Virus record (IMG/VR): IMGVR_UViG_3300031787_007614
Span: 248,001 to 312,000 of that record
Length of the DNA: 64,000 bases
Direction: 5' to 3' (one strand)
A program made the translations under genes and the position numbers. The notes under the pieces are model-generated. The model was not told the origin of the DNA, did no database searches, and saw nothing but the letters and a program-made list of their open reading frames with translations. Positions 3,001 to 31,949 of the stretch are shown here, piece by piece. The number at the start of each line of letters is the position of its first letter. The stretch's first letter is position 1.

Positions 3001-6000
3001 GCCAGCGCCTGTGGTAACAATGTTGCCACCTGTGACGTTACCAGTTGCAGAAACTACGCCAGCAGTCAACAAATTGCCACCAGTTACGTTACCAGTTACA
3101 ATTGCAGTGCCGCTTGTGACTATGCTTGCTACGTTGGCCGTACCAGCTGTTACCAAATTACCACCAGTTACGTTGGCAGTTACTGATACTGTGGTACCTG
3201 TGTGAGTGGTTGCGTTGACATTGGCGCCACCTAAGATATTGCCACCAGTGATGTTGCCAGTTACCGAGACTGTAGTACCTGTGTGAGTGGTTGCATTAAC
3301 GTTAGCACCACCTAAGATATTGCCACCAGTGATGTTGCCAGTAGCACTTACTTGTCCTGCTGTGGTTAGATTGCCACCAGTCACGTTGGCAGTTACTGAT
3401 ACTGTAGTACCTGTGTGGGTAGTTGCGTTGACATTAGCACCACCTAAAATATTACCACCAGTGATGTTGCCAACAGCACTAAATGCGCCAGACGCTGTGA
3501 CTATACCTGTACCATTTGGTGCCAACGCAATGTTGCCGTTGCTACCTGTAATAATTGTTAAAGCACCAGTGTCTACAATATTGCCAGCAATATTCAAGTT
3601 ACCACCAGTAATGTTACCAGTAGCACTTATTTGACCTGCTGTAGTTAGATTGCCACCTGACACGTTGGCAGTTACACTGACTGTGGTACCTGTGTGAGTT
3701 GTGGCGTTAACGTTAGCGCCACCCATGATGTTGCCACCAGTTACATTGCCTGTAGCACTTACTTCGCCAGCTGTGGTCAAATTACCACCTGACACGTTGG
3801 CTGTAGCAACAACTTGTCCTGCTGTGGTCAAATTACCACCTGACACATTGCCTGTAGCACTGATCAAGCCAGTAACATATTCGCCAGTTGCAGCATATAC
3901 CGCCACATTGGCAGTTCCGCCAACCCCAACTGCTACGTTGCCACCTGAGCTTACAATAGAAACATTTGATGTTCCGCTGACAATTTGTGTGGGTGTACCT
4001 GTTGCAACGCCTGTCAACAATGCACCATTACCAACAAAGTAATTGCCAGTCACGTTGCCTGTGGCACTGACTTGACCAACTGTGGTCACGTTGCCAGCTA
4101 TCACATTTCCTTGTGCAGATACAACTCCCAACACAGTCATTGTGTTGGAGTCTGTGTTATATGTAAATCCTGCTACTGCGCCAGCATTGCCATTGGCGTT
4201 GTAAAGCACTTGTGTGTTTGAACCAGGAACAGTTAAGTTACCAGTAATGTTGCCGGCAAAGTTACCCACAAAGTAACCTGTAGTGATAATATTACCTGCG
4301 GCACTTACTGTACCTTGAGTGCGTATGTTTGCGCCGTCAATGTTGCCTGTAGCAGTGATCAATCCTGCTGTGGTCAAGTTTCCACCAGTTACGTTGGCAG
4401 TTACTGATACTGTAGTACCTGTGTGAGTGGTTGCATTAACATTAGCACCACCTAAGATATTACCACCGGTGATGTTACCAGTTGCACTAATCAGACCACC
4501 TGTGGTCAAGTTTCCACCTGACACATTGGCTGCTGAAGTAATATTGCCTGTTGCGCTTACTTGTCCTGCTGTGGTTAAATTGCCACCTGACACATTAGCA
4601 GTAGCAACCACTTGGCCGCCTGTGTTTACATTCCCACCTGTGATGTTGCCCGAAGCACTGATTACTGTGCCAGTTACGCTTTGAGTTGTATTAATGTTGT
4701 TAGCAATAACGTTGCCAGCAACGCTGACCAAACCAGTTGAAACTAAATTTCCGCCACTGACATTGGCAGTTGTGATAATATTAGCAGTTTCAGTACCACT
4801 GGCCAAGTATGTTGAAACATCTGAGTTGGCATATCCTGCTGGCAAGCCAGTCAACGCACTGCCATTACCTAAAATGTATCCGCCACTGATGTTGGCTGTG
4901 GTTGTTATATTTGCCGCAGACACTAATGCACTGACAACGTTGCCACTTAGGCTCAAGCCTGTGGCATTCAAGTTACCACCAGTGACGTTACCAGTAGCTG
5001 TAACCTGCCCTGCTGTGCGTAGATTACCGCCATCTATGTTGCCAGTGACTGAAACATTGCCCACGGTCAATAGGTTATCATCAGTCCGGTAGGTGAGATC
5101 CACATCCGCCCGTGCTATCTGAGCTGTGGTGCGATTCTCTACAAACGTAGGGTAGTAAATGGTTGTTAGGCCGTTTGTGTCTGTTACATCAACAGTTACG
5201 GAATTGACCCCTGTGAGTTGTGAGCCATTACCTAAAATGTAGTTGCCTGAAATGTTAGCAGTAGTTGTAATATTGGCTGCTGAAACTAACGCACTAACAA
5301 CGTTACCACTCAAGCTCAATCCTGTGGCATTTAAATTACCACCTGACACATTGCCAGTTGCTGATATCAGTCCAACAGTGCGTAAGTTGCCACCATCAAT
5401 ATTGGCAGTTACACTCAATGATCCGAGTGTACCAACACTTGTGATATTAGGTTGTGCGGCTGTGCTCAATGTACCGGCAACATTGCCGCCACTGATGTTG
5501 GCAGTGGTTGTTATGTTGCCTGTTCCGCTAATAACATTTGACCCTAACGCGGCCAATAATGTTGTAACATTTGAATCTGCATAGCTGGCAGGTAAACCGG
5601 TCAGTTGACTACCATTACCAATAAAGTAGTTTGCTGTTACGTTACCAGCAACACTCATTCCTGTTGAGGCAAAAGTATAAACGTTGGTCACGCCACCAAT
5701 GTTACCAACCACGTTGCCGTTGGCCACAGGAATATTAAATTCTGTTGTGCCGTTTGAAAGTTTGCTTGCTGATCCAACATTTGAGCTGGCAGTAACGCCA
5801 GTAAGTCCAGCACCGTTACCAATGAAAATACCGTTGACAACTTGTATGTTGCCGTTGGCAAGTAGTGCGCCAATGTTGCCCGAGTAGGTTGGCAAATATG
5901 CCTGAACATTAGCGTTTGAATATGTTGCTGGCAAGCCAGTCAGTTGACTACCATTACCTAATATATAACTGCCGGTGATGTTGCCTGAAGTACTAACTGT

Positions 6001-21100: not shown

Positions 21101-21630
21101 GTGTATACACCCAGCTCTTTCATGCTCAAGCCAAGCTTCTTGGCGTCGCGGAAGATGCCCATCATGCCATCTGAACCAGCCAGGCCAGCTTTGGCCATTT
21201 TGGTATTGGCAGCAAACAAGTTGTCGGCCATGTCGTTGGCCGCCTGAGTCATCTTAATACTAGCGCCAACTGCGGCTGTGCCCAGACCAATTAGAGCTTT
21301 GATCAAGAACCCGCCAGGCACCAAGAAAGTCAACGCAGCACCGGCTGCGGTAACTGCTTTGCTCATGCTGTCAAGTGAACTGTTAAATGCTGCGGCGCCT
21401 TTTTGGCCATCGTACATGGCTTTGCCGGCTGCAAGACCTGCACCTGCTAGGTTTCCCAGCGCACCTGCTGTTAACGCACTGGCCTTGTCAAGTTCTTTTG
21501 CTCGACGGAAACTTCCTGCTGCCAGTGCTGCCTGGGTATCTTCAGTAACTCGCCCAAAATTTCTAAGGTCGTCAGAAACTCGTGCTATGACTTCAGCCAT
21601 TTCTTGTGATGCTTGATTTACGTCCGCCAT
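18154..21630 (-). CDS. Tape-measure-like protein with embedded M15-type Zn peptidase domain
   Basis: 1158 aa, Ala/Gln-rich and helical, with Gly/Ala hydrophobic stretches and two GE(R/K)GPE motifs. It also carries SLHTKGQAMD…HFH (SxHxxGxAxD + HxH). Confidence 0.75.
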   Translation of the reverse strand: MADVNQASQEMAEVIARVSDDLRNFGRVTEDTQAALAAGSFRRAKELDKASALTAGALGNLAGAGLAAGKAMYDGQKGAAAFNSSLDSMSKAVTAAGAALTFLVPGGFLIKALIGLGTAAVGASIKMTQAANDMADNLFAANTKMAKAGLAGSDGMMGIFRDAKKLGLSMKELGVYTNAVAANSAELALFKGTAFEGRQAFANIGAAMKPFRVSLEAAGISLEDQIEGTAGYLRLQTLIGQSQNKTNQELATGARKYLVEMDGLSKLTGMQRQEIEKQMESALSEQRFRAKLDAMRATKDPQQMAAADQLMRANLMLSKQAPELGQAFRDIQSGALTSDAAVKGVISTQGQLMQSSEALQSGQIDANQAVKQIGTSIGQFNKDLNFTAQLGLLNDFAIDYAQGQKLAIFAQQDISKIAAEIVVEQNKQMSGLGDANTRAMAELREMQRNANEKFETTVSQSISTAIAMSKSLVGVTEPIATAFKELQPVMDKFMKQMVKLTDWIAEKLGFIVGKTVDVVEATQKDGMGGFYRSGGSEMVGTGVGALAGAAGGKIAGTYAGGIVGSLFGPAGTVAGAAIGGKIGPYIATALGSVLGKYLGMGADALGTALTPPGRAAGGPVSRRNPYIVGERGPELMVPEQSGKIINNDKLSKMFESMASSVSSGQVSVDMISQVMGSSVTVVTNTNDELTNNLRTTQNVGSTYQAILRSVDELNDKNKKTTESVIVAQRDTLTDIQRIERYTDQDTKRTKEFVDFHKKYLDSVTQILGENLELLQEQSEQSGSAGSGGAPGMGGGTGLKIPAAPPAGGMGGGSGVSPGGGQGMKTANENNLLSMGLKFDPNRDVQAEGAAISPKLIELAKNVQSLVPGFSAFTGFNDQFHNEKSPNSLHTKGQAMDFVLNKKPTREEGASIVSWLKQSGASLAIDEYHNATKNATGGHFHAQIPAFGDGGMVDKATLALIGEKGPEAVIPMDGKEIPLNISKPIPIKLDFKDVMAEGGIGPSVMGYNQYTGYNTGAVSTDLAAVKEIATAMGAFDKASQTITDPATWKEIINSGIATNFDTNIMKIGTQMFDGAGPLLGQRLNDIVAENGVNQKEAFDLMFAEFKEAMTVLGTEMANKIAKENASPETDALIAGIDALIAKQSEANDISKKILQVSAN

Positions 21631-21641
21631 TGAAAAACACC

Positions 21642-21661
21642 TATAAGTAGAAGTATATTTA
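21642..21661. promoter_or_regulatory. Face-to-face late promoters for the divergent tape-measure and chaperone genes
   Basis: TATAAGTA on + (21642-21649) and TAAATA on - (21656-21661) within a 41-nt intergenic gap. Confidence 0.6.
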
Positions 21662-21671
21662 TGGGTACACT

Positions 21672-22517
21672 ATGAACCAAAATCACAATCCACTTAGACA
21701 ATTTTTTAGACAACCAGCAATTTACTTGCGGTTGCCCAGCCAGGGCAAATACTGGCCCGAAGGCAGCTTAGACGTGCCTCAAAACGGTGAGCTGCCTGTT
21801 TATCCCATGACAGCCATTGACGAAATCACCTATCGCACGCCAGATGCGCTGTTTAGCGGGCAAGCTGTGGTCAATGTAATACACAGTTGTGTGCCGTCAA
21901 TTAAGAATGCCTGGCATGCTCCTGTGGCAGATTTGAATTCTATCCTAGTTGCTATTCGTATTGCCAGCTACGGGCATGAGCTTGAAATTGAAACTACATG
22001 TCCTGCTTGCAAACACATTGAGAGTTTTGCGTTAGACTTGCGCAATGCACTGGATCAGTTGACCATGCCGGACTTTTCTGCCACAGTAACTTATGGTGAT
22101 TTGGAAATTTATTTTCATCCCATGAGTTACGAAAAGCAAAATGAAATCAATCTTGAGCAGTTTGAAAATCAACGCATGATGCGCAACATCAGCATGGATA
22201 CTGAGCTCACCGAAGACGAAAAGTTACAAAAACTAGCAGAAGTGATGAAAATACTAACTCAGCTGACCATGCGAGCTCTCAAGTACTCAATTTCAGCAAT
22301 TCGTACACCAAATGCTGTTGTGTCAGAGACTGAGCACATTGATGAATTTTTGCAAAACTGCGATCGTCAAATTTTTGTTGCTGTTAGAGATCACGCAGTT
22401 GACTTGCGCAATCGTACAGAACTGAAACCTGTGCATCTCACTTGCAGTGAATGCAATCACGAACATGATCAAGCACTAAATCTGGATCTTACAAATTTTT
22501 TCGAAGCCGCCTCCTGA
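21672..22517 (+). CDS. T4 gp26-like baseplate hub / tail assembly chaperone
   Basis: Motifs LPSQGKYW, ELPVYPMTAIDE, ILVAIRIASYG, two CxxC pairs and C-terminal LTNFF; adjacent to the tape-measure gene. Confidence 0.75.
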   Translation: MNQNHNPLRQFFRQPAIYLRLPSQGKYWPEGSLDVPQNGELPVYPMTAIDEITYRTPDALFSGQAVVNVIHSCVPSIKNAWHAPVADLNSILVAIRIASYGHELEIETTCPACKHIESFALDLRNALDQLTMPDFSATVTYGDLEIYFHPMSYEKQNEINLEQFENQRMMRNISMDTELTEDEKLQKLAEVMKILTQLTMRALKYSISAIRTPNAVVSETEHIDEFLQNCDRQIFVAVRDHAVDLRNRTELKPVHLTCSECNHEHDQALNLDLTNFFEAAS

Positions 22518-22732
22518 TCCTCCCAGTAGAGGAAATTGGCGAGTACATTGACAGCCTTGATCAGGAGGCCAACGCAATTAGATCAAACAGTTTAAGATTG
22601 GCTTGGTTAATGCGCGGCGGACTCACCTACGATCAGGTGTTGGCACTAAGTTTCACTGAAAGAAAAATGATCAGCAAGATAGCCGAAGAAAACATGGAAA
22701 CCACCAACAAAACTAAACTGCCGTATTTCTAA
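22499..22732 (+). CDS. -1 frame extension (~77 aa, gp51-like), probably reached by frameshift; not in ORF track
   Basis: The -1 frame is open from 22469 to TAA at 22730-22732 and encodes RSRLLILPVEEIGEYIDSLDQE…WLMRGGLTYDQVLALSFTERKMI…KLPYF. The slippery site A AAT TTT TTC is at 22493-22502. Confidence 0.7.
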   Translation, partial: FRSRLLILPVEEIGEYIDSLDQEANAIRSNSLRLAWLMRGGLTYDQVLALSFTERKMISKIAEENMETTNKTKLPYF

Positions 22733-23232
22733 TGGACTTAGATACAGTTAAACAAGATATTGAAAACTGGATTGTGAACTTTGTAGAAGTTCCACATCCT
22801 GCTCTTGGAGGCTGGGCTCCTTGTCCATACGCACGCTCAGCACGCATGAAAAAAAGCTACGATGTACATGTTGGCGTAGATCCTTACTTTGATCTTAAAA
22901 ATCGAGCACGATGGGGCATGGGCGATAAGGAAGTTATTATCTATGCTTACGATCCTGTGGAATGGCCATATGAATTGTTCAGTGACAGTTTGAAAAATGC
23001 CAACAAGGAACATTTGTTACGCAACGATCTACTTGCACTAGAGGATCATCCCGCAGACGTTGAGATGGTGAACGGTGTGTGTATGAATCAAGGCAAGTAT
23101 GCTCTAGCTCTAGTGCAAAGTCTCAGCGACTTAAACAACAAAGCCAAACTTATGGCTGAGAAGGGATTCTATCACAACTGGCCAGAAGAGTATCTTGCGG
23201 GACTGTTTGAACATCGTAAGGATCCAAGATGA
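22732..23232 (+). CDS. DUF1415-like hypothetical protein
   Basis: W..NFVE…PCPYAR N-terminal motif, DHP, and NQGKYALALVQ. Confidence 0.45.
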   Translation: MDLDTVKQDIENWIVNFVEVPHPALGGWAPCPYARSARMKKSYDVHVGVDPYFDLKNRARWGMGDKEVIIYAYDPVEWPYELFSDSLKNANKEHLLRNDLLALEDHPADVEMVNGVCMNQGKYALALVQSLSDLNNKAKLMAEKGFYHNWPEEYLAGLFEHRKDPR

Positions 23233-23663
23233 GCTATCAGTTTGCCAGAATCGATCTCAGCCAGACCAACTACACACCAAATGTAAAGTGGGAGTATTTG
23301 CGTGAGCCCAACATCAAACAGCTAAACTCTATCTACAGAGACTATTGCAAATACAAACATTTTGCAAGTGTGATGCCTATATTTGACTGTCGTTACACAG
23401 ACCCAATGACAGATGTAATAGGATATTACGATCAAAATCGATTGGTTGCATTCAGTTTGATCCGACGCTATGATGATCATAACGCACTGTGCGATCAATT
23501 TGCATGGAACTACAACAATCCTAAACTACGGTTGGGAATTGAAACAATGAAAACAGAGTGTGCTATCTACAAGGAACGAGGATTCCAATACTTGTATCTT
23601 GAGCAAGCACACCTATACAAATCCAACATGGACGGATTTGAAATACTAGGACCACTGGAGTAA
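23229..23663 (+). CDS. Arginyl/leucyl-tRNA-protein transferase C-terminal-like (ATE_C/Bpt, GNAT fold) protein
   Basis: GYYDQNRLVAFS…FAWNY..PKLRLG…E….KERGFQYLYL resembles the ATE_C pattern; no ATE N-terminal domain is visible. Confidence 0.55.
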   Translation: MSYQFARIDLSQTNYTPNVKWEYLREPNIKQLNSIYRDYCKYKHFASVMPIFDCRYTDPMTDVIGYYDQNRLVAFSLIRRYDDHNALCDQFAWNYNNPKLRLGIETMKTECAIYKERGFQYLYLEQAHLYKSNMDGFEILGPLE

Positions 23664-23665
23664 CT

Positions 23666-24001
23666 ATGGATTTATATACAATTTGGGCAGACAAAGAAGG
23701 CGACATCTCAGACTTAGACTGGGTCAACGGAATGAAAAGTTTCTTTGATCATTTGATATCAGAAGACAAGATGGTAGACTATCGTATCACAAGATGCAAG
23801 ATGGGATTCCGTTCAATTGCGGACATGCCTGAATGGATGATTATCATGGAGTTCCGAGACATGGGTCAAATGGACTCGGCTTTCAAACGAGTAGCACCGC
23901 TTGAGGGTGAACTTGAAGTCAAACACAAGTCATTCAATCAATTTGTGTCAGGCAATATTCAACATGCTTTATTTAGAGACTGGCCAGACACATTTGTATG
24001 A
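23666..24001 (+). CDS. DUF6614-like small alpha/beta protein
   Basis: Pattern MDLYTIW…YRITRCKMG…PEWMIIMEF…QMDSAF…ALFRDWPD. Confidence 0.45.
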   Translation: MDLYTIWADKEGDISDLDWVNGMKSFFDHLISEDKMVDYRITRCKMGFRSIADMPEWMIIMEFRDMGQMDSAFKRVAPLEGELEVKHKSFNQFVSGNIQHALFRDWPDTFV

Positions 24002-24522
24002 ACATCCTCGATCATGTACCTGTAGTACCTGATTGGCCCAAACCAGGTATTAACTTTTTTGACGTAACTGGCATTCTTGCCAATCCAGAAGCATTTGATT
24101 ACTGCTGTGGATGGTTAAAGCATCAAGCACATTGGTATAATGCTTCCAGTCTTGTGGCTGTGGAAAGCCGTGGCTTTGTGTTTGCGGCACCTGTAGCAAG
24201 ACAATTAGGACTTCCACTAATCCTAGTACGTAAACGTGGCAAATTGCCCGGCCCCACAATACAACACAGCTATCAAACTGAATACAGCACTGATACCATT
24301 GAAATGCACCCACACGCTCCAGTAGGCGCACATCCATTGATTGTGGATGACTTGCTAGCCACTGGAGGCACTATAATGGCCACAGCAAATCTAATTCGCA
24401 GTCATTGGATTGACACTAAAATTTCTGCTGCTGTGATTATAAACTTGCAGAACTTGCCTGGAGGGACAGCATTGACTCGGCACAATATTATGTGGGAAGG
24501 AATGGTCAATGTTGATGAATGA
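23998..24522 (+). CDS. apt: Adenine phosphoribosyltransferase
   Basis: Motifs PDWPKPGINFFDV, ESRGF, VRKRGKLPG, Y.TEY and the PRPP-binding loop LIVDDLLATGGT. Confidence 0.93.
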   Translation: MNILDHVPVVPDWPKPGINFFDVTGILANPEAFDYCCGWLKHQAHWYNASSLVAVESRGFVFAAPVARQLGLPLILVRKRGKLPGPTIQHSYQTEYSTDTIEMHPHAPVGAHPLIVDDLLATGGTIMATANLIRSHWIDTKISAAVIINLQNLPGGTALTRHNIMWEGMVNVDE

Positions 24523-25051
24523 TATTATTTTAATAGCTATTCGAGCAGAAGCACCAGATCTCAGCCACATGATGAACTTGTTTTACACTGGTGTGGGCAA
24601 GGTTAACGCTGCCATCACTGCCAGTGAAGTTATCACAAAGTATCGTCCCCGGCGTATCATTAACTTTGGCACAGCTGGTGGTATAACAGTCGCACCAGGA
24701 TTCTATCAATGCACTCAGTTTGTGCAAAGAGACATGACTTGTGAAGCATTAGGGTGTACCCCAGGACAAACACCTTTTGAAACTAGCACACACATTGGCA
24801 ACTCTACTGGCTTAACTTGCAGTACTGGTGACAACTTTGTGATGAATCCCATACTACAAATACCAGCAGATGTTGTAGACATGGAAGCCTATGCCATTGC
24901 CAAAGCATGCGAGAAATATGGAGTTGAGTTTGTGTGTTGGAAATACATCAGCGATCAAGCCAACCAACACGCACACAATGATTGGCAACAACAAGTTGCT
25001 CAAGGACAATCACATTATGTCAACAAACTCAAAGAGTTAAACTTATTATAA
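24509..25051 (+). CDS. mtnN: 5'-methylthioadenosine/S-adenosylhomocysteine nucleosidase (PNP_UDP_1 family)
   Basis: Motifs GVGKVNAA, INFGTAG, STGDNFV, VDMEAYAIA and KYISD; the true start may be 24515. Confidence 0.85.
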   Translation: MLMNDIILIAIRAEAPDLSHMMNLFYTGVGKVNAAITASEVITKYRPRRIINFGTAGGITVAPGFYQCTQFVQRDMTCEALGCTPGQTPFETSTHIGNSTGLTCSTGDNFVMNPILQIPADVVDMEAYAIAKACEKYGVEFVCWKYISDQANQHAHNDWQQQVAQGQSHYVNKLKELNLL

Positions 25052-25509
25052 GACTTGCTACGCAAGTCTATTAACTTCGCTTGCGCTCGTTAATTGATTG
25101 ATTTTCAAGAGCGAAGCGATTAAGTATTCATGTAGATAGATCTAGTCAGACGGAACCGTTTTGCGCGGTTCCGCTGTTGTCTTCATGTGAGTATCACTAG
25201 CCAAGACATTGGAAGTAGGTAATTTATTATACACCGTATGCTAAAGGACTCTGTGCTTTTCCTTCCTACCACGATACACATATTTCTACGTGCTCTAAAC
25301 CTCGTTCCTAGTGTTTAGATTTTTATAGCCGGTGTTCTCGTATGCTAACATTCATACTATATCAATGCGTCGGCCCTATTGTTCTAGCCTCAGACTCACT
25401 TCCAATTTTTCAGGATAGTCAGATTTACTGACGGGAGTGCCTCAATATGTCACGTGTCCGGTTATTCCCCGGTTTTTCCACAGCGGTATTACAAACTGGC
25501 CCGCCAACC
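25051..25509. ncRNA. Candidate large structured non-coding RNA (or structured DNA element); minus strand favoured
   Basis: ~460 nt with no ORF >=60 aa in an otherwise gap-free region. It contains at least 7 local stems and a 9-bp long-range complement (25208-25216 / 25398-25406). Confidence 0.5.
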
Positions 25510-25776
25510 TTAAGTGTTAGGTAAAATATAACCTTTTGGAATCCAATTAACAAATTTTCCACCGCAAGTGTTGCAAACTATTTTGCCTGCATGCGGTCCG
25601 GTAGGTTTGTTGACTATTTCCCATTCATGATTTTCGTGTATGCCTAATTGTTGCCTGAGTTTTTTTCGTTGTTCGTGCCATGCTTTATCAAATCCTGTCT
25701 TTGGATTAGTCCAATACGGATCATTCAAAAAGCCAGTGTCGCTTTTGTTAGTTTTACTGTAGTCAAGTTTAGTCAT
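25510..25776 (-). CDS. Small putative Zn-binding protein (H..H, PH, CxxC)
   Basis: HENH…PHAGKIVCNTCGGKFVNW; its start overlaps the GIY-YIG stop. Confidence 0.6.
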   Translation of the reverse strand: MTKLDYSKTNKSDTGFLNDPYWTNPKTGFDKAWHEQRKKLRQQLGIHENHEWEIVNKPTGPHAGKIVCNTCGGKFVNWIPKGYILPNT

Positions 25777-26201
25777 AATTTTCCTACGATGTGTGAGCCA
25801 TGCACACGAACTTGAATATGGCCGTTATAATAATCTGTTGATTCCAATACTTTTCTTGTGAACTGTTCTCTTGCTTCAATGTACGAACATTCTGATTTTG
25901 ATTTACAATAGTAAAGTATTTCTCTGGTAAAGTTTTCGGTGCCTAAAGTGATTACGTCTGCGGTTAATTCTGGGCTTGACCCGTAGTACTCTCTCCAATC
26001 TGAATCAATCTTTGATCGTATCTTCTTCCGCTTCTTTGTGCCGTTCTTTTGTTTGACTATTTTGTATGTTGTTTTGCTAAATTTTGCTAATTTTTTGCCT
26101 ATGTACTTGCGTCCAGATAGATTATTTGTGATTAGATAAACAAAACCTACACATTCTTCGGGCAGAGTCTCAACTGGGGTGTCTTGATGTAGCCATGTCA
26201 T
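25773..26201 (-). CDS. Stand-alone GIY-YIG nuclease-domain protein
   Basis: GFVYLITNNLSGRKYIGKK, YYGSS, FTREIL, E..EQF and YYN; CATAACTA lies upstream. Confidence 0.85.
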   Translation of the reverse strand: MTWLHQDTPVETLPEECVGFVYLITNNLSGRKYIGKKLAKFSKTTYKIVKQKNGTKKRKKIRSKIDSDWREYYGSSPELTADVITLGTENFTREILYYCKSKSECSYIEAREQFTRKVLESTDYYNGHIQVRVHGSHIVGKL

Positions 26202-26234: not shown

Positions 26235-26849
26235 TTATGATTTATGATCAAAGTTTACGTAAAAAGTTGCCTCTTCTATCACTGTGTTTGGACCAACAGA
26301 GATAGCGTATGTTATAAAATTGCTAATATCTTTTAAATTAATGCCGTTTCCTGTCCAGGTGGGCCGTCCACGACTTAGTTCTGTGTCCAAGCGATCAGGT
26401 GTGATTAGCGTGGTTCTGAACTGCACCAGATTTTGTTTGAATGACTGGGTGCCCTGCCTGCTGGCATGTGCCAGTGCCGCCTTGGCCACGCGGTACGTTT
26501 CAAATCTAGGCTCAGCAGCAACAATATGATGCTCGCCCACTGATCCAATATTAAAGATGTGCCCACTTTTGCCAGCGTTTTTCCACTTGTCGTATACTGC
26601 CATGTACAAGTTTGTTTGTGCAAAGTTGGCCCAGGCTTCTTGTGGTGGCCCATCAAATGCATTGTTTACAAACACATCATAATTCAAACTTTGTTGAGCA
26701 ATCAATTTGACTGCTTGGTCATCAGTGATATCCAAGTTTGTGGATCTGCTGACACTGTCAGCACCAAACACATCCACTAGGTGTTGCCCCAGTCCTCGGT
26801 TACCGCCTGTAACTAACATTTTCATCTTTTGCTTCCTCCTTGATCCCAA
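26235..26849 (-). CDS. Short-chain dehydrogenase/reductase (start probably 26825)
   Basis: Motifs TGGNRGLG, FVNNA, NIGS and catalytic YRVAK. Confidence 0.9.
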   Translation of the reverse strand: MGSRRKQKMKMLVTGGNRGLGQHLVDVFGADSVSRSTNLDITDDQAVKLIAQQSLNYDVFVNNAFDGPPQEAWANFAQTNLYMAVYDKWKNAGKSGHIFNIGSVGEHHIVAAEPRFETYRVAKAALAHASRQGTQSFKQNLVQFRTTLITPDRLDTELSRGRPTWTGNGINLKDISNFITYAISVGPNTVIEEATFYVNFDHKS

Positions 26850-27910
26850 ACTTTTGTAAATTTTTCACCGCATGTCATAGCACATTCAAACAATCGATCA
26901 CGAGTAAACGATTCAACTAAATCACTCCACATGGGATTTTCAAAAACACCTTCGAGGCTATTGTTATGAATGTTGAGATTATCTAATCCGTAACACAACA
27001 AAAAGTCTCGTACTTGATTGCGACCACCGGGCTGACTTAATGCATTTGCTCCTGGCATTGATCCATCATAAAATCTTGCATCATACAAATTGTGATTGAA
27101 AAAGTTGCATGGTAATACAACACCTTCGGCGTTGATAGCTACTTTGCGTCCTTGCAAGGCATCACATTTGATAGTAGTAGTAGCAAAGTAGTTCTGTTGC
27201 TTTTTTAACTCAGGTAAAAATGTCATACTGCGATTCTTGTACTGTGCATCACTAGGTGGTTCAAGTACATAGTCACTTTTGGCCACTGGCCACACAGGCA
27301 TCTCTTCCAGGGTGGTGTGATTCAAAAATCTACCAGTGTTTCGAATTAGTATGTTAAAAAATTTCATACTGCTGGCCAGTTGTTTGGCCTGCTCAACTTG
27401 GTGCTCGTTGTGTTTGAATACAATATAGTTCCATTGTGCTCGTCCTCCAGCATTTATAAACGCAGCGGCGTTTTCAATAACTTTGTTGTATTTTACATTT
27501 TTTCTATACAAATGTAAAGTATCTTCTAGTCCGTCAATACCAAAGTCAATTTGTCCGTAGCCGTTCATGATACTAGAAACTTCTGCCCAGTAATCAGGAT
27601 CGTGTACTCCGCCATTGGTATGGAAGTATAACCAAAGTGTAGGAGCTTTCTTTCTAAAGTCACGTAGTATGTCTAAAAAGTCTGGATGCATGATGGGATC
27701 GCCATAACTGCCGCAAAAGAATACTTGACGTAATCTACTGCACAATTCTTCAGAGAATGCACGGTCAATTACTTCACGTGATAAGTGTGTTAACGGCATG
27801 TAAGGATTGATACCATGTCCGTTGAGGTTGCGAGGACACTGGGGACAGGCAGCATTACAATAGCTGGTGATCTCTATCTGATACTCGTCAATAGTTTTAT
27901 AATCAAACAT
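26822..27910 (-). CDS. Radical SAM enzyme with C-terminal SPASM/twitch-like Cys domain
   Basis: CNAACPQC, GDP, HTNG, IDGL, G.VLPC and CAMTC. Confidence 0.9.
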   Translation of the reverse strand: MFDYKTIDEYQIEITSYCNAACPQCPRNLNGHGINPYMPLTHLSREVIDRAFSEELCSRLRQVFFCGSYGDPIMHPDFLDILRDFRKKAPTLWLYFHTNGGVHDPDYWAEVSSIMNGYGQIDFGIDGLEDTLHLYRKNVKYNKVIENAAAFINAGGRAQWNYIVFKHNEHQVEQAKQLASSMKFFNILIRNTGRFLNHTTLEEMPVWPVAKSDYVLEPPSDAQYKNRSMTFLPELKKQQNYFATTTIKCDALQGRKVAINAEGVVLPCNFFNHNLYDARFYDGSMPGANALSQPGGRNQVRDFLLCYGLDNLNIHNNSLEGVFENPMWSDLVESFTRDRLFECAMTCGEKFTKVWDQGGSKR

Positions 27911-28397: not shown

Positions 28398-29871
28398 TGG
28401 CCAACTCCGTAAGATATCGATCTTTGATAATACTCAAGTGATCATCACCTTTCCAGATAGTATATCCCAGATCTTCGGCCAACTTGTGCAGTTCAATGCG
28501 TCGACGCACACGTTCTGCATAGTCAAGTTCAGGTGTTGTGGTACAAATCCAATTGATGCCTTTGGCGGTGTCGCCCTTGATTGGAACAATGTTAAATTTT
28601 GCAGGATTATCAAACATAGGTGTTCCTTGTTCTACTGTCAATCCTGTGCCTAAGTTGCATCCAATAATAGTTCCTAGTGCAACATATTTCTGCCAGCGTC
28701 GTAGCAAGTTCTTGGTCTCTTCAAAGTCGGTTTGTGTTTCATTTGGAAACCCTACCAGCAACAACAAGAAGAATTTCATTTTGTACTTGCTGAACTGCTG
28801 TATGTTAAACTCAAGATCTGCGTTTGAAAATCCCTTGTTCATGATGTTTCGCAAACGTTCGCTACCAGTCTCAACTCCAGTTTCAAACATTTCTCCTCCG
28901 GCACGACTTAGCAGTTCAAAATTGTGCTCTTTGAATTGAGTTTCACTTCGCACAATCCAATAACCACTGAATGTAAAGAATCTGTCAGGTAAATTGTTTT
29001 GTTGATAAAACTCAATGATGCAGTTCAAAAATAGTTTAAAATCTTTGACGCTGCCGTTCATCAACGCATCGTTAAAATAAAAGTTACGCACACCATACTG
29101 TTGGTAATAGCCAATCATTTCATTAGCTAGTACCTTTCCGTTTTTGTATCTATATCCTCCAGCATGTGTGGGGATGTCACAAAACGCACAGCTTCTAACA
29201 CATCCACGACTGCTTTCAATTGGCAATACCCCGCCGGGGTAGGCAGTTACATATTGTTCTATTGCAAAGTCACTATAATCTGCGATGTTGTTAGTATCAA
29301 GATCAACATCATTGACCAACACATCACTGTCTAATCCAGGTACATTGCTACCAGTTAAAAAATTGTAAAAACTGTTTTCAGCTTCTCCAGCAATCCAATG
29401 ATCAATTAGTCCTTGATTTTTTAACTTGTGTGCAAAATGCATCTTGGTACTAAAGCTACCGTTTTGTTCATTGATAAGACCTTGTCCGCCTACAATGATT
29501 GTGCCTGTAAAATTTTTACGCAACAATGGAAAAAAGTCAAGACAAAATCGTTGACTTTCCCAACTGAATACACTTACTGCAATGATCTTGCAATCAAAAG
29601 CCATTAATTTTTCAACCCATGCTTGCAACCAACTAGAGTAAGTTGTTTTCTCCTCAGGCAACAGATTTTTGTTCCATTGTATCCAATATTGATCAATGGC
29701 ATTGGCAGTTGACGGATTAGAAGATTTAAAATTTTGATAAAAGTCCAAATTAATATCAAAAACTTTTGAAGTAACGCCCGCACGATTGCAAATTGATTTG
29801 AGTATGCCACAGGCACTTTGAGGCCGAGTGGCACTCAAACGTGGTATACTTAAAATCAAAACATCAGTCAT
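28390..29871 (-). CDS. B12-binding-domain-like radical SAM protein
   Basis: N-terminal IAVSVFSW…IIVGG, then SSRGCVRSCAFCD, GVETGSER and VGFPNET..DF. Confidence 0.85.
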   Translation of the reverse strand: MTDVLILSIPRLSATRPQSACGILKSICNRAGVTSKVFDINLDFYQNFKSSNPSTANAIDQYWIQWNKNLLPEEKTTYSSWLQAWVEKLMAFDCKIIAVSVFSWESQRFCLDFFPLLRKNFTGTIIVGGQGLINEQNGSFSTKMHFAHKLKNQGLIDHWIAGEAENSFYNFLTGSNVPGLDSDVLVNDVDLDTNNIADYSDFAIEQYVTAYPGGVLPIESSRGCVRSCAFCDIPTHAGGYRYKNGKVLANEMIGYYQQYGVRNFYFNDALMNGSVKDFKLFLNCIIEFYQQNNLPDRFFTFSGYWIVRSETQFKEHNFELLSRAGGEMFETGVETGSERLRNIMNKGFSNADLEFNIQQFSKYKMKFFLLLLVGFPNETQTDFEETKNLLRRWQKYVALGTIIGCNLGTGLTVEQGTPMFDNPAKFNIVPIKGDTAKGINWICTTTPELDYAERVRRRIELHKLAEDLGYTIWKGDDHLSIIKDRYLTELANV

Positions 29872-31949
29872 GCCACTTCTATATCTGTGTTGTAGCTGGT
29901 AAAGCCATTCTCTTTGATCACTTTGAGAATGTTTTCAACTCTGCTAGTAAGTTCATCTCTATGACTAACCAGCCAGATTGACTTGTGGCGTTCGCGACTC
30001 ATCTTCTTCAACAGGCCTAGTGCATTTTCCACACCTTGTGTGTCCAACCCGTTGTCAATCATCTCGTCAATAAACAACAAGTTGATGGGCGAGTACAAAC
30101 TTTCCCAAACATCACGGAATGCCCAGCTCATGCTTAAGATCAATCGATTGCGTTCGCCACGACTCAAGTTGTCAAAATCCAGTTCACGACCCAGTTCTTC
30201 AATGCTCACTGTCAAGTCGTTCATGAACTTCACTGTGTGTGGTAAGCCAATTCTATCCAAGTAGTGTGTGAGACGTTGATTCAAATAGCTCAAGTTCTGT
30301 TCAATAATCTTCTTACGCACAAACGAGTCTTTTGAGGTCAAAAGTTTGAGCAAGAAGTCCTGATGGTCTTGCACTCTAGTAAGTTCGTTTAAGTGATCGT
30401 AACTCACAACCTGTAGGGCCTGTTGTTGCATTTCGGTAATTTGTTCTGTATACGGATCGGTCTCTAGTGCTTTGCCATTGATCTGTGTCAGCAGGGTGTT
30501 CATGCGACTGCGATGATCGATTGCCTGTGTTTCGGTATCATAATGTGTGACAGGTTGTGTGCCAACTTCTACAGGTGTGTGTTCTGCTAACTGTTCAGCA
30601 TAGGGATCTGTTTCTGCACGTTTGGCATCAATCTTGTGTTGAATGTTTTCCAACTCACTAGAATGTCGAATAGCTTCTGTTTCTGTTTGGTAGTGTGTTG
30701 TGGGTTTGGCACCCAACTCGCCCAATGCGGTTAACGCATCTGTATTTTCCATCCACTGAGTATTGATAGACAATGCTTGTAGTGCTGCCTCTTGCAAGGC
30801 CTTTTCTTTTGTTGCCAATACTGTTTCGTGATTGGTATCATGGAAGTCTTGCCCGCAAGCATAGCACTTGTGATTTTTTAATTCTTCAATTTCGGCTTTG
30901 AGTTTGTTGATGACCTTTTGTTCTTTGGCCTCGTCTGCTACACATCGAGCAATGTATTTTTCTAAGTCTGTAATGTCTTTGGCTTTTTGAATGTAAGCAG
31001 CCAAATCTGTGTGTGCTTGAAGTTCTGCCAAGATGTCGATATGACTGAGTTTGTTGTAGGTTGATTCTAGCTCACCAATGTCTTTGTGTTGTTTTTGTTT
31101 CCAAGCAGTTTGTCGACCAACAAGAGCAGTATATGCATCTTGTTGTTGTTTTCTTGCAGACCACACAGCTAGATCTTTGTGAGCCAGCAGTTCTAGTTCA
31201 ATATCAATCTTTGCTAGATCGTCATACTGACCAACTAGATAAGCCACGTCACTGTCGTACTTCTTTTGCCAAAGCACTTGCCTACGCTTTAGACTCTCAA
31301 TCTGTTCTTCGATGCGTTTGTTGGCTTCTTGCACAGCACGAATTCTAAACTCTTCAGACTGGATAGCATCTTTGGTTTGTCGGTTGAGTTCTTTGATGCG
31401 GTCCGCACGTTCACTCAACAAGGTAATACCTAACAACTGCTCAATGATTGTGCGCTGGTCATTGGCCTTCAAACTTAGAAACGGTTCTGTGTAGGTGTTC
31501 AGCGCCAGCACATGTTTGAACATGTCATGGCTCATGCCAATAATACGCTCTATGGCGTCTTGTGTCTCTCTTGAATCTCCCTGTGCCTCATCCTCTGCGG
31601 CCTTGTGTTCGTTGTTTACATAGAACTTGAGTACGTTGGGTTTGCGCCCACGTTCAATTTTGTAGTCTGTGCCGTTGATATGAAAGTCTAAGCTGACCAA
31701 CATGTGTTTGGCATTGGTTTTGTTTACTAGATTGTCTTTGCGGATGTTTGACAGTGCTTGGCCATATAATGCATAACTTAGTGCATTGATGATTGTGGTC
31801 TTACCTGTGCCGTTTCTCGATCCATCGCCACCCAAGTCTAAGTTTTCACCCAGCACCAGTGTAAGATCATTGCGGTCAAAGTCAATGGCCTGTGTGGCTG
31901 CGCCTACACTCATGAAGTTTTTAACAGTGAGATTTCGTATTTGTATCAT
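29868..31949 (-). CDS. gp46: Recombination ATPase, gp46/Rad50/SbcC
   Basis: Walker A RNGTGKT, Zn hook CYAC, signature LSRGE, Walker B LFIDE and SH switch. Confidence 0.95.
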   Translation of the reverse strand: MIQIRNLTVKNFMSVGAATQAIDFDRNDLTLVLGENLDLGGDGSRNGTGKTTIINALSYALYGQALSNIRKDNLVNKTNAKHMLVSLDFHINGTDYKIERGRKPNVLKFYVNNEHKAAEDEAQGDSRETQDAIERIIGMSHDMFKHVLALNTYTEPFLSLKANDQRTIIEQLLGITLLSERADRIKELNRQTKDAIQSEEFRIRAVQEANKRIEEQIESLKRRQVLWQKKYDSDVAYLVGQYDDLAKIDIELELLAHKDLAVWSARKQQQDAYTALVGRQTAWKQKQHKDIGELESTYNKLSHIDILAELQAHTDLAAYIQKAKDITDLEKYIARCVADEAKEQKVINKLKAEIEELKNHKCYACGQDFHDTNHETVLATKEKALQEAALQALSINTQWMENTDALTALGELGAKPTTHYQTETEAIRHSSELENIQHKIDAKRAETDPYAEQLAEHTPVEVGTQPVTHYDTETQAIDHRSRMNTLLTQINGKALETDPYTEQITEMQQQALQVVSYDHLNELTRVQDHQDFLLKLLTSKDSFVRKKIIEQNLSYLNQRLTHYLDRIGLPHTVKFMNDLTVSIEELGRELDFDNLSRGERNRLILSMSWAFRDVWESLYSPINLLFIDEMIDNGLDTQGVENALGLLKKMSRERHKSIWLVSHRDELTSRVENILKVIKENGFTSYNTDIEVA

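What the first reader, a model, noticed from the sequence alone, without database searches (positions are those of the whole stretch)
23229..23663. Phage-encoded minimal aminoacyl-tRNA-protein transferase-like enzyme in a late operon
Seen: a 144-aa ATE_C-like GNAT domain is coupled to a CPYA-containing upstream protein, downstream of the tail-chaperone late promoter. Known: Bpt and ATE1 add Leu or Arg from aa-tRNA to N-terminal Asp/Glu in the N-degron pathway. Inference: it may tag proteins for host ClpS-ClpAP degradation (for example acidic core fragments released by gp21, or host factors) or aminoacylate another acceptor. The upstream DUF may replace the missing N-terminal domain.
Basis: inference. 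Interest (0 to 1): 0.6.

Follow-up and report, generated by a model that had tools for sequence, protein, structure and literature searches.

The report
Minimal phage ATE-like transferase in arginine module
A very common gene of uncultured freshwater jumbo phages encodes a stripped-down relative of the enzymes that add amino acids from tRNA onto proteins, and its conserved neighbours point to arginine chemistry rather than protein-degradation tagging.

Summary
The 144-aa ORF at 23229-23663 is real and strongly conserved. It is a true but divergent homologue of the catalytic GNAT domain of ATE1/Bpt aminoacyl-tRNA-protein transferases. A family profile hits only ATE1 structures (E 4e-10), and the AF2 model has pLDDT 95.

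It keeps the ATE1 active-site Lys/Tyr, two ATE1-specific tRNA-contact aromatics and the Arg-binding Glu. It has no acetyl-CoA P-loop. It lacks the whole ATE_N domain, which holds the pocket for acidic N-termini, and the basic tRNA helix.

It is translationally coupled (ATGA overlap in 50 of 52 distinct loci) to a 166-aa DUF6875/DUF1415-like protein and is followed by DUF6614. The best structural match of the 166-aa protein is the haem guanidine N-hydroxylase AglA.

L-arginine amidinotransferase homologues sit directly next to the transferase gene in three lineages. These are a subset of this phage's relatives and two distant long-form lineages.

ClpS and ClpX exist in this phage but about 125 kb away. 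Close Clp neighbours occur only in a different subfamily.

Best reading: an Arg-tRNA-dependent transferase in a phage arginine/guanidino-modifying module, acceptor unknown. The N-degron reading remains possible but is less likely. It is a new viral variant of a known enzyme family.

The parts
21630..21659 (+). Candidate promoter region of the + strand block: a sigma-70-like TTGAAA-18-TATATT site, with a late-like TATAAGTA at 21642-21649 inside it
   Evidence: These are consensus matches only; function and timing were not shown.
21672..22517 (+). 281-aa T4-type baseplate hub protein, first gene of the block
   Evidence: PF12322 E 9.6e-15 and phrog_150 'baseplate hub' E 8.8e-18. Present in 73 of 80 related loci.
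22598..22732 (+). Small conserved ORF (44 aa from TTG here, 62 aa in relatives). Its stop overlaps the ATG of the next gene (TAATG).
   Evidence: Present in 74 of 80 loci.
22732..23232 (+). 166-aa DUF6875/DUF1415-like protein with invariant Cys31 (PCPxAR) and an E104-D105-H106-P107 block. It is the translationally coupled partner, a putative redox or ligand-binding enzyme.
   Evidence: - Weak DUF6875 match in all 22 members scanned.
- AF2 pLDDT 88.
- Atlas fold TM 0.82 to DUF1415/DUF6875 clusters.
- Best solved match is AglA 9ub3: Z 6.6, 149 residues aligned, next best Z 4.0.
- Invariant residues.
- A homologue (38% identity, E 1e-39) lies next to long-form P0167.
23229..23663 (+). The finding: a 144-aa single-domain ATE_C-family GNAT, the putative aminoacyl-tRNA (probably Arg-tRNA) dependent transferase core
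23666..24001 (+). 111-aa DUF6614 protein, the third conserved member of the module (2-5 nt after the transferase gene)
   Evidence: PF20319 E 1.4e-20. Present in 79 of 80 loci at 75-100% identity. No solved relative: best is coprohaem decarboxylase at E 0.2, not significant.
23998..24522 (+). Adenine phosphoribosyltransferase, a variable accessory gene of the block
   Evidence: NF002636 E 3.8e-47, 160 bits, above the 125-bit cutoff. Present in only 12 of 80 loci.
24509..25051 (+). Nucleosidase of the PNP_UDP_1 / MTA-SAH nucleosidase type, a variable accessory gene
   Evidence: PF01048 E 1.6e-19 and NF004168 E 5.7e-30. Present in 15 of 80 loci.
25151..25173 (+). Terminator-like hairpin (9 pairs, 6 G-C) closing the + strand block
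   Evidence: a consensus match only

Best explanation
The gene encodes the bare catalytic GNAT core of an ATE1/Bpt-type aminoacyl-tRNA transferase. It most likely takes an aminoacyl group from charged tRNA and joins it to an amino group of an acceptor, using the conserved Tyr130-Lys131 pair as in ATE1 and FemX. The donor is probably arginine, because the Glu that binds the Arg side chain in ATE1 is kept.

It has lost the ATE_N domain that reads acidic protein N-termini, so its acceptor is probably not the classical Asp/Glu N-terminus. It works as part of a conserved phage module with a DUF6875/DUF1415-like protein and DUF6614. The DUF6875-like protein has an invariant Cys and a fold closest to the thiolate-haem guanidine N-hydroxylase AglA. 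In several lineages the module also includes an L-arginine amidinotransferase homologue.

The module is therefore best read as an arginine/guanidino-group conjugating and tailoring pathway of freshwater jumbo phages. Its product is still unknown and could be a small molecule, a nucleotide, DNA or a protein adduct.

Shown: homology, fold, residue conservation, gene coupling and gene neighbourhoods.
Inferred: tRNA dependence, Arg specificity, the haem chemistry of the partner, and the nature of the acceptor.
For: 1. ATE-specific homology.
- The profile hits only ATE1 structures (E 3.8e-10).
- Long-form relatives pass the ATE_C cutoff.

2. Fold.
- The model is a complete GNAT domain with pLDDT 95.
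- Its top structural neighbours are rich in aa-tRNA transferases: MprF Z 14.9, FemX 14.3, Sba18/Sbb17 13.0.

3. Residue mapping onto klAte1 (PMC9351520).
- Y39=Y173, W93=W260, E110=E277, Y130=Y303, K131=K304.
- Each is conserved in about 90% or more of 28 short and 35 long forms.
- Y173 and W260 are described in that paper as ATE1-specific.

4. No acetyl-CoA motif.
- No [QR]xxGx[GA] in any of 66 family members.

5. Module conservation.
- ATGA coupling to the 166-aa gene in 50 of 52 distinct loci, and DUF6614 lies 2-5 nt downstream.
- The 166-aa partner is again adjacent, on the opposite strand, to the distant long form P0167 (38% identity, E 1e-39).

6. Arginine link.
- Amidinotransferase homologues (HsvA, AGAT, StrB1, SxtG; E 7e-10 down to 1.6e-39; catalytic Cys, His and Asp invariant) lie directly beside the ATE_C-like gene.
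- They do so in 9 of 80 loci of this lineage, on either side of the gene and translationally coupled, and in the P0167 and P0199 lineages.

7. Partner fold.
- Best solved match is AglA, a guanidine N-hydroxylase with an axial Cys.
- The argolaphos cluster pairs such an enzyme with GNAT aa-tRNA ligases.

8. Possible transcription.
- RNA-library contigs from four studies cover the genes and both junctions.
Against: - No biochemical data exist.
- The basic alpha-3 helix that is essential for tRNA binding in klAte1 is absent. The protein is mildly acidic (pI 6.3), so tRNA binding is unproven.
- The AglA match is structural only (Z 6.6, below the level the tool calls safe). No YqcI/YcgG sequence signal was found.
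- Whether Cys31 overlays the AglA haem ligand could not be checked.
- The window's own operon has no amidinotransferase. This phage carries dispersed amidinotransferase paralogues, so some adjacency could reflect a mobile paralogue family.
- All characterised ATE_C-family members act on protein N-termini.
Confidence: 0.45

Rival explanations
1. N-degron writer. The enzyme adds a destabilising or pre-destabilising residue from aa-tRNA to protein N-termini, so that phage ClpS hands them to host ClpAP.
For: - Every characterised ATE_C-family enzyme (ATE1, Bpt) does this (PMC9351520).
- The phage encodes a bona fide ClpS (79.7 bits) and a full ClpX (534 bits, above the equivalog cutoff).
- Both near-complete relatives also have ClpS.
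- In another subfamily of the same superfamily, a ClpA N-domain+D1 homologue lies two genes upstream (L006). A ClpS lies 3.5 kb away in L102.
Against: - The ATE_N acceptor pocket for Asp/Glu N-termini is missing.
- ClpS is about 125 kb from the gene. Clp genes are common in this jumbo-phage group even without the transferase: Atu_ph07 has ClpS, ClpX, ClpA and ClpP, yet no phage record has the transferase.
- The close Clp neighbours occur only in the 'family Y' subfamily, not in the subfamily of the window gene.
- Five further lineages showed no Clp neighbour.
- An Arg donor would give only a secondary destabilising residue in bacteria.
Confidence: 0.22
2. An ordinary acyl-CoA-dependent GNAT, either an acetyltransferase or another acyltransferase, acting on a protein or small molecule.
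For: Structure alone cannot separate the classes. VipF, N-myristoyltransferase and tandem GNATs score about as well as aa-tRNA transferases (Z 13-14.6).
Against: - Sequence profiles match only ATE1/ATE_C.
- The pyrophosphate-binding motif [QR]xxGx[GA] is absent in 66 of 66 members.
- ATE1-specific residues are conserved.
Confidence: 0.07
3. An envelope modifier of the MprF or FemX type, aminoacylating a host lipid or peptidoglycan precursor, for example to block superinfection.
For: The top structural matches are the MprF/aaPGS catalytic domains and FemX (Z 14.3-14.9).
Against: - There is no sequence-level match to DUF2156 or FemAB families.
- The protein has a single GNAT domain and no membrane segment, whereas those enzymes use tandem GNAT domains.
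- The neighbours are not envelope genes.
Confidence: 0.05
4. A non-transferring binder or hydrolase of charged tRNA. It would use the retained donor site to sequester or deacylate a host aa-tRNA, or serve as a substrate-presenting subunit for its partners.
For: - The donor-side residues are retained while acceptor-side elements are lost.
- It has always-coupled partner genes.
Against: The putative catalytic Lys and Tyr are about 95% conserved across very divergent members, which fits catalysis of transfer. No direct evidence either way.
Confidence: 0.08

Closest known systems
ATE1 arginyl-tRNA-protein transferase (eukaryotes) and Bpt leucyl-tRNA-protein transferase (bacteria), Pfam ATE_N + ATE_C
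   Same: - The catalytic GNAT domain is homologous (profile E 3.8e-10 to klAte1 and yeast ATE1).
- The FxW[DN]Y...P..LG...E...G..Y.Y...YK...GFE motif string is shared.
- Equivalents of K304, Y303, W260, Y173 and E277 are conserved.
- The donor pocket is ATE1-like at Ser/Ser/Glu and Bpt-like (Leu) at the fourth position.
   Different: - It is 144 aa instead of about 235 (Bpt) or about 500 (ATE1).
- It has no ATE_N domain, so no Zn/Fe-S cysteines and no Arg80/Tyr25/Tyr87 acidic-N-terminus pocket.
- It has no basic alpha-3 tRNA helix.
- It scores below the Pfam cutoff.
- It is phage-encoded and always coupled to DUF6875-like and DUF6614 genes.
GNAT-fold aminoacyl-tRNA-dependent amide ligases of natural-product pathways (argolaphos AlpF/AlpO, Sbb17/Sba18, DhpH-type)
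   Same: - GNAT fold; Sba18 and Sbb17 are among the structural matches (Z 13.0).
- The genomic pairing is with a guanidine-hydroxylase-like protein and with arginine-using enzymes. This recalls the argolaphos cluster (YqcI/YcgG enzyme plus GNAT aa-tRNA ligases; PMC8976061).
   Different: - No detectable sequence relationship to those ligases; the sequence affinity is to ATE_C.
- Those enzymes have two GNAT lobes.
- The context is a lytic jumbo phage, not an actinomycete gene cluster.
AglA and the YqcI/YcgG thiolate-haem guanidine N-hydroxylases (compared with the 166-aa partner)
   Same: - AglA is the only solved structure standing above background (Z 6.6, 149 of 166 residues aligned).
- Both are alpha/beta sandwiches.
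- Both have an invariant Cys shortly after helix 1.
- Both have an arginine-related genomic context.
   Different: - No sequence-level match to PF08892.
- The partner is shorter (166 aa against about 245-275 aa).
- Haem binding is untested.
- By sequence and predicted fold it belongs with DUF6875/DUF1415.
L-arginine amidinotransferases (AGAT, StrB1, SxtG, HsvA) (compared with the recurrent neighbour gene)
   Same: - Full-length homology in L118 (StrB1 E 1.6e-39).
- The C-terminal GG.HC.T.D catalytic-Cys segment is conserved.
- Invariant His, Asp and Cys residues are present.
   Different: - The phage copies are divergent and silent in Pfam.
- They are absent from the window's own operon, although a paralogue lies about 60 kb away in the same genome.
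- The acceptor is unknown.

Membership tests
ATE_C / ATE1-Bpt aminoacyl-tRNA-protein transferases | Scores above the Pfam PF04377 gathering cutoff | tested here: not met
   17.5 bits against a cutoff of 25 for the window protein. Long-form relatives score 25.5-35.1 bits and pass.
ATE_C / ATE1-Bpt aminoacyl-tRNA-protein transferases | Profile-level homology to the catalytic domain of solved ATE1 | tested here: met
   The A3 profile against the PDB returns only ATE1 chains (7wfx, 7wg1, 8e3s, 7tif, 8j6v) at E 3.8e-10 to 7.7e-10.
ATE_C / ATE1-Bpt aminoacyl-tRNA-protein transferases | GNAT fold of the catalytic domain | tested here: met
   AF2 pLDDT 95. The model has beta-alpha-alpha-beta3-alpha-beta-alpha-beta topology. 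Z is 12-15 to GNAT aa-tRNA transferases.
ATE_C / ATE1-Bpt aminoacyl-tRNA-protein transferases | Active-site Lys304 and Tyr303, and tRNA-contact Trp260 and Tyr173 (klAte1 numbering) | tested here: met
   K131, Y130, W93 and Y39 align to them (with numbering). They are conserved in 24-28 of 28 short forms and 31-35 of 35 long forms.
ATE_C / ATE1-Bpt aminoacyl-tRNA-protein transferases | Donor side-chain pocket (ATE1 Ser255/Ser273/Glu277/Tyr289; Bpt Ala/Ala/Gln/Leu) | tested here: inconclusive
   The window protein has Cys88/Thr106/Glu110/Leu122. Glu is conserved in 58 of 63 members. This suggests a basic donor such as Arg, but specificity cannot be read from sequence alone.
ATE_C / ATE1-Bpt aminoacyl-tRNA-protein transferases | ATE_N domain with the Cys cluster and the Arg80/Tyr25/Tyr87 pocket for N-terminal Asp/Glu | tested here: not met
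   The protein starts at the strand that follows ATE_N. No ATE_N match was found. Long forms have a Cys-less N-terminal extension that the short form lacks.
ATE_C / ATE1-Bpt aminoacyl-tRNA-protein transferases | Basic alpha-3 helix required for tRNA binding in klAte1 | tested here: not met
   The segment is deleted in the short forms in alignment A2. Only four positions are 70% or more Lys/Arg family-wide, and pI is 6.3.
ATE_C / ATE1-Bpt aminoacyl-tRNA-protein transferases | aa-tRNA-dependent aminoacyl transfer to a protein N-terminus | not testable with these tools
   This needs an in vitro assay.
Acetyl-CoA-dependent GNAT acetyltransferases | Motif A pyrophosphate-binding loop [QR]xxGx[GA] | tested here: not met
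   Absent from all 66 family sequences. The loop reads P-K-L-R-L-G-I-E, as in ATE1 (SLGK).
YqcI/YcgG thiolate-haem guanidine N-hydroxylases (166-aa partner) | Sequence match to PF08892 | tested here: not met
   No hit at E up to 10 in the genome or in 22 family members. There was no PDB sequence hit to AglA either.
YqcI/YcgG thiolate-haem guanidine N-hydroxylases (166-aa partner) | Sandwich fold with an axial Cys ligand | tested here: inconclusive
   AglA is the top solved match (Z 6.6, rmsd 3.9, 149 residues aligned; next best Z 4.0). Cys31 is invariant, but the residue-level overlay with Cys44 was not obtainable.
DUF6875 / DUF1415 (166-aa partner) | Pfam match and shared predicted fold | tested here: inconclusive
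   All 22 members hit DUF6875, but below the cutoff (best E 0.0014). Atlas models of DUF1415/DUF6875 clusters superpose at TM 0.81-0.82, and language-model neighbours agree.
L-arginine amidinotransferases (recurrent neighbour) | Homology including the catalytic Cys-His-Asp residues | tested here: met
   PDB hits to StrB1, SxtG, HsvA and AGAT range from E 1.6e-39 (L118) to 7e-10 (L030). Invariant His, Asp and Cys residues appear in alignment A10.
ClpS N-degron adaptor (elsewhere in the phage genome) | Scores above the PF02617 cutoff | tested here: met
   79.7-79.8 bits against a cutoff of 23; 103-aa ORF at G000:C1:212391-212702. The substrate-pocket residues were not formally checked.

The most novel reading that the evidence does not exclude
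Freshwater jumbo phages run a previously unknown tRNA-dependent arginine pathway. A minimal ATE-like enzyme takes Arg from Arg-tRNA and attaches it to a non-canonical acceptor, such as a nucleotide or DNA base, a polyamine-like amine or a virion or host protein. A thiolate-haem DUF6875 enzyme, DUF6614 and, in some phages, an amidinotransferase then tailor the guanidino group. This would be a new class of viral hypermodification or metabolite synthesis, and the first viral member of the ATE family.
Probability: 0.18. Interest if true: 0.9.

Novelty: new variant of a known kind. Interest (0 to 1): 0.66.

Why it matters
ATE1/Bpt enzymes are known only from cells, and only as writers of N-degrons. 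Here a stripped-down catalytic core is fixed in a very abundant group of uncultured freshwater jumbo phages. There are at least 2,900 sequence clusters and at least 594 viral contigs, yet none among 50,697 deposited phage genomes. The core is tied to partner genes of unknown function and to arginine-using enzymes.

If active, it shows that the ATE catalytic domain can work without ATE_N. It would also extend tRNA-dependent, non-ribosomal aminoacylation to viruses. It gives a concrete three- or four-gene system in which the functions of DUF6875/DUF1415 and DUF6614 can be tested directly.

The related 'family Y' subfamily, which lies next to ClpA- and ClpS-like genes, may separately be a genuine viral N-degron system.

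Tried and rejected
- **Complex prediction.** The ATE_C-like protein was folded with the 166-aa partner using matched 22-row alignments. The score was 0.13 against a mark of 0.32, so the tool gives no verdict. This is not evidence for or against binding.
- **Single-sequence and low-diversity searches.** The low-diversity profile A1 found nothing relevant in the PDB. NCBIfam and PHROGs had no family for the 144-aa protein.
- **Cultured phages.**
  - Megablast of the region found nothing.
  - tblastn of the short form and two long forms found nothing.
  - tblastn of DUF6614 also found nothing.
- **Locus search.** The search for related loci with the broad alignment A3 failed for lack of a conserved stretch. 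It was repeated with A4.
- **166-aa partner.**
  - Foldseek against the PDB gave no hit at E 0.001 or better.
  - The PDB profile search gave only chance hits.
  - PF08892 and PF07209 were not detected in the genome.
- **Partner families.** hhalign gave no support for homology between 'family Y' and the 166-aa family (probability about 1%).
- **L006 69-aa ORF.** It is not ClpS.
- **Other transferases and Clp parts.** Leu/Phe-transferase (PF03588), ClpP and Clp_N were not found in the 220-kb record.
- **Late promoter.** Exact TATAAATA occurs at chance level.
- **Insertions.** I first took the ~1.1-kb insertions to be homing endonucleases. That was rejected, because they encode amidinotransferase homologues.
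- **Phage tRNAs.** The record starts in a tRNA cluster (12 genes, including Arg-TCG, two Leu and Phe). This does not discriminate between donors.
- **Not done.** Rfam was not searched.
Full report
**The observation**

An ATG-started ORF of 144 aa occupies 23229-23663 on the + strand. On its own it matches Pfam ATE_C only weakly (E 0.0066, 17.5 bits, cutoff 25). It matches nothing in PHROGs or NCBIfam.

It is nevertheless a real, strongly constrained gene. A word-indexed search returned 2,918 clusters at 90% identity, all unnamed. An IMG/VR scan found at least 594 viral contigs. Twenty close homologues are 81-91% identical, with more than half of the columns invariant.

**Homology and fold**

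An exhaustive HMMER search of 1.8 billion representatives found 136 relatives. They are of two kinds. Short forms have about 144 aa. Long forms have 225-268 aa, and the query aligns to their residues from about 60 to 200.

The long forms pass the ATE_C gathering cutoff (25.5-35.1 bits) and weakly hit NCBIfam arginyltransferase models. They are far below the equivalog cutoffs and have no ATE_N match.

A 66-sequence profile of both kinds (A3) matches only ATE1 arginyltransferase structures in the whole PDB, at E 3.8e-10 to 7.7e-10.

AlphaFold2 on that alignment gives a confident single GNAT domain (pLDDT 95, pTM 0.88). Its structural neighbours are GNAT aa-tRNA transferases: MprF/aaPGS Z 14.9, FemX 14.3, Sba18/Sbb17 13.0, and ATE1 by Foldseek. 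These are mixed with tandem-GNAT acyl-CoA enzymes such as VipF and N-myristoyltransferase. Structure alone therefore does not decide the donor. The sequence profile does point specifically to ATE.

**Residue mapping**

The klAte1 structure paper (PMC9351520) defines the functional residues:
- Lys304 is the active-site residue.
- Tyr303 is essential.
- Trp260 and Tyr173 are ATE1-specific tRNA contacts.
- Ser255, Ser273, Glu277 and Tyr289 form the Arg-binding donor pocket (Ala, Ala, Gln, Leu in Bpt).
- Arg80, Tyr25 and Tyr87 in ATE_N form the pocket for acidic N-termini.
- A basic alpha-3 helix (Lys112-Lys123) is essential for tRNA binding.

The gap-free HMM alignment uses chain numbering equal to native numbering plus 4. 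It maps onto the window protein as follows:

| Window protein | klAte1 |
|---|---|
| W93 | W260 |
| E110 | E277 |
| Y130 | Y303 |
| K131 | K304 |
| Y39 | Y173 |

The donor pocket in the window protein reads Cys88, Thr106, Glu110, Leu122. These residues are conserved in 24-28 of 28 short forms and 31-35 of 35 long forms.

The acetyl-CoA P-loop motif [QR]xxGx[GA] is absent from all 66 sequences.

What is missing is equally clear. The short form begins at the strand that follows ATE_N, so the acceptor pocket and the metal-binding cysteines are gone. The basic helix is deleted too. The protein is mildly acidic, with pI 6.3.

**The local module**

Genes from 22598 to 25051 are tightly packed with TAATG and ATGA overlaps, and a terminator-like hairpin follows at 25151-25173.

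Across 80 related viral loci, five genes appear wherever the flank is long enough:

| Gene | Loci of 80 |
|---|---|
| Baseplate hub (281 aa) | 73 |
| Small ORF | 74 |
| 166-aa protein | 78 |
| ATE_C-like protein | 80 |
| DUF6614 | 79 |
| Adenine phosphoribosyltransferase | 12 |
| Nucleosidase | 15 |

The 4-nt overlap between the 166-aa gene and the ATE_C-like gene is kept in 50 of 52 distinct loci. DUF6614 follows after 2-5 nt.

A 50%-identical short form has the same two neighbours.

**The partners**

*The 166-aa protein.*
- It weakly matches DUF6875 in all 22 members scanned.
- It has language-model and predicted-fold neighbours in DUF1415/DUF6875 clusters.
- It has invariant Cys31 (PCPxAR), Glu104-Asp105-His106-Pro107, Glu111, Asn114 and Asn119.
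- Its AF2 model (pLDDT 88) has no Foldseek match.
- A Foldseek-independent scan of 48,161 chains gives one hit standing above the rest. That hit is AglA (9ub3), with Z 6.6, 149 residues aligned and the next best at Z 4.0.
- AglA is the prototype YqcI/YcgG thiolate-haem enzyme that N-hydroxylates the guanidine of a conjugated arginine. Cys44 is its axial ligand (PMC12866846).
- Its gene cluster also encodes GNAT-type aa-tRNA ligases (PMC8976061).
- There is no sequence-level support for this link, so it remains a lead.

*DUF6614.* It is the most conserved of the three but has no informative relative.

*Amidinotransferases.*
- In 9 of the 80 loci a gap of about 1.1-1.2 kb separates the ATE_C-like gene from one of its neighbours.
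- In the two loci I examined, the gap holds a 376-410-aa ORF, translationally coupled. It lies between the ATE_C-like gene and DUF6614 in L030, and between the 166-aa gene and the ATE_C-like gene in L088.
- This ORF is a homologue of L-arginine amidinotransferases (HsvA E 7e-10; AGAT, StrB1, SxtG about 1e-6). It includes the catalytic-Cys C-terminus.
- The same family lies directly next to the ATE_C-like gene in two distant long-form lineages:
  - L099 (P0167): E 3e-47 to the L030 protein, divergent orientation, and the DUF6875-like partner lies on the other side.
  - L118 (P0199): StrB1 E 1.6e-39, convergent orientation.
- His, Asp and Cys residues are invariant in all five copies aligned.
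- The window's own genome has a paralogue about 60 kb away (AGAT E 3e-16), next to a carbamoyltransferase. This tempers the argument but does not remove it.

**Subfamilies and the Clp question**

The 166-aa partner is found, at 38% identity and on the opposite strand, next to long form P0167. P0167 still has its own N-terminal extension. The partner also occurs at 25-29% identity in four cultured marine phages (five records) that have no ATE_C-like gene, twice beside a 2OG-Fe(II) oxygenase. It is therefore not a stand-in for ATE_N.

Five other long-form lineages (P0213, P0229, P0224, P0236, P0222) instead share an unrelated neighbour of 180-226 aa, which I call 'family Y'. It is in this second subfamily that Clp genes lie close:
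- A ClpA N-domain+D1 homologue (E 2e-99) lies two genes upstream in L006.
- A ClpS lies 3.5 kb away in L102.

The window phage does encode ClpX, ribosomal protein S21, Hsp20 and ClpS in one cluster at G000:C1:210138-212702. Both near-complete relatives also have ClpS.

That cluster is about 125 kb from the transferase gene, which lies at C1:87534-87965. Clp genes are also a known feature of this jumbo-phage group irrespective of the transferase (PMC7824862, PMC6102473). No Clp neighbour was seen in the five lineages looked up last.

**The phage, its habitat and expression**

- The window is part of a 220.5-kb viral record estimated 63% complete. Relatives reach 340-343 kb.
- The portal is about 50% identical to those of Agrobacterium phage Atu_ph07, Sinorhizobium phage Phosso and Pseudomonas phage PA5oct. 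The host is probably a proteobacterium, which is an inference.
- Near-identical DNA occurs in lake and freshwater metagenomes from many studies.
- Contigs from four RNA libraries cover the block, including both junctions of the ATE_C-like gene. As the tool states, this does not prove transcription.
- The promoter claim rests on a one-mismatch late-like motif and an overlapping sigma-70-like site.

**Synthesis**

Shown:
- It is an authentic, abundant, viral, single-domain member of the ATE catalytic superfamily.
- The donor-side catalytic residues are intact.
- It has no acetyl-CoA motif, no ATE_N and no basic helix.
- It has fixed coupling to two proteins of unknown function, and recurrent adjacency to arginine amidinotransferases.

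Inferred:
- It uses aminoacyl-tRNA, probably Arg-tRNA because of Glu110.
- Its acceptor is not the classical acidic N-terminus.
- The module performs arginine/guanidino conjugation and tailoring.

I put this reading at about 0.45 and the N-degron reading at about 0.22. The remainder is shared among an acyl-CoA GNAT, an envelope modifier and a non-transferring aa-tRNA binder.

**Novelty**

I found no paper describing a phage ATE/Bpt-like enzyme in the library searched. No copy exists in 50,697 deposited phage genomes. It is a new viral variant of a known enzyme family, with new partners.

**Limits and compliance**

- No biochemical test was possible.
- The AglA link is structural and modest.
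- Neighbourhood counts are not corrected for relatedness or background.

Noticed in passing
window 22505-22732 (+): The small conserved ORF upstream of the 166-aa gene has no ATG, GTG or TTG before 22598 in this phage. Its frame stays open back past the stop of the baseplate-hub gene (22515-22517), in the -1 frame, and the extra residues align with the 62-aa ORF of relatives. This could be a non-canonical start or a programmed frameshift extension of the hub protein.
   Followed up: partly
window 23998-25051 (+) and 26235-27910 (-): Adenine phosphoribosyltransferase and an MTA/SAH-type nucleosidase are present in only 12-15 of 80 related loci. They lie near a radical-SAM gene and a short-chain dehydrogenase. 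Together they could salvage adenine from 5'-deoxyadenosine made by radical-SAM chemistry.
   Followed up: no
G000:C1:210138-212702 (L010 5139-7703), outside the window: A proteostasis cluster: full-length ClpX (534 bits, above the equivalog cutoff), ribosomal protein S21, a 75-aa ORF, Hsp20 and ClpS. No ClpP or ClpA was found in the 220-kb record.
   Followed up: partly
G000:C1:26468-27496 and 28867-30357 (L113 6468-7496, 8867-10357), outside the window: A second amidinotransferase homologue (AGAT E 3e-16) lies in an overlapping three-gene run, next to a NodU/CmcH-type carbamoyltransferase. A weaker amidinotransferase-like segment lies near C1:218.5 kb.
   Followed up: partly
L006, L093, L102, L114, L115 (long-form loci): An uncharacterised protein of 180-226 aa ('family Y', N-terminus like LN.NIP.F.CF) is always adjacent to a second subfamily of ATE_C-like long forms. 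Two of the five lineages also have a ClpA-like or ClpS gene nearby. This subfamily may be the better candidate for a viral N-degron system.
   Followed up: partly
L096-L098 and L117: A third partner type: an ORF of about 76-101 aa overlaps or abuts the ATE_C-like genes P0206 and P0219 (46% identity between the two). It has no family match.
   Followed up: no
window 25773-26201 (-): A SegE-like GIY-YIG homing endonuclease (PF19835 E 1.4e-32) lies just downstream of the block, in 62 of 80 loci. The region is a hotspot of gene gain and loss.
   Followed up: no
window 45435-60137 (+): A single 4,900-aa ORF follows a 1,226-aa ORF. It is presumably a giant fibre or decoration protein.
   Followed up: no
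window about 1-5600: Near-identical stretches of about 60 nt recur upstream of several short + strand ORFs, for example before 3332, 3725 and 4472. This suggests a repetitive coding region that the simple ORF call fragments.
   Followed up: no
window upstream of 10718 (+), 32975 (-), 15176 (-), 18154 (-), 33979 (+), 41755 (+): Two near-perfect sigma-70-type promoters (TTGACA-17-TAGAAT and TTGACA-17-TACAAT) precede non-structural genes. NATAAATA late-like motifs sit 24-40 nt upstream of several structural genes.
   Followed up: partly
G000:C1:69-3425, outside the window: The viral record begins inside a tRNA cluster. There are 12 tRNA genes in 3.4 kb, including Arg-TCG, Leu-TAG, Leu-CAA and Phe-GAA.
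   Followed up: no
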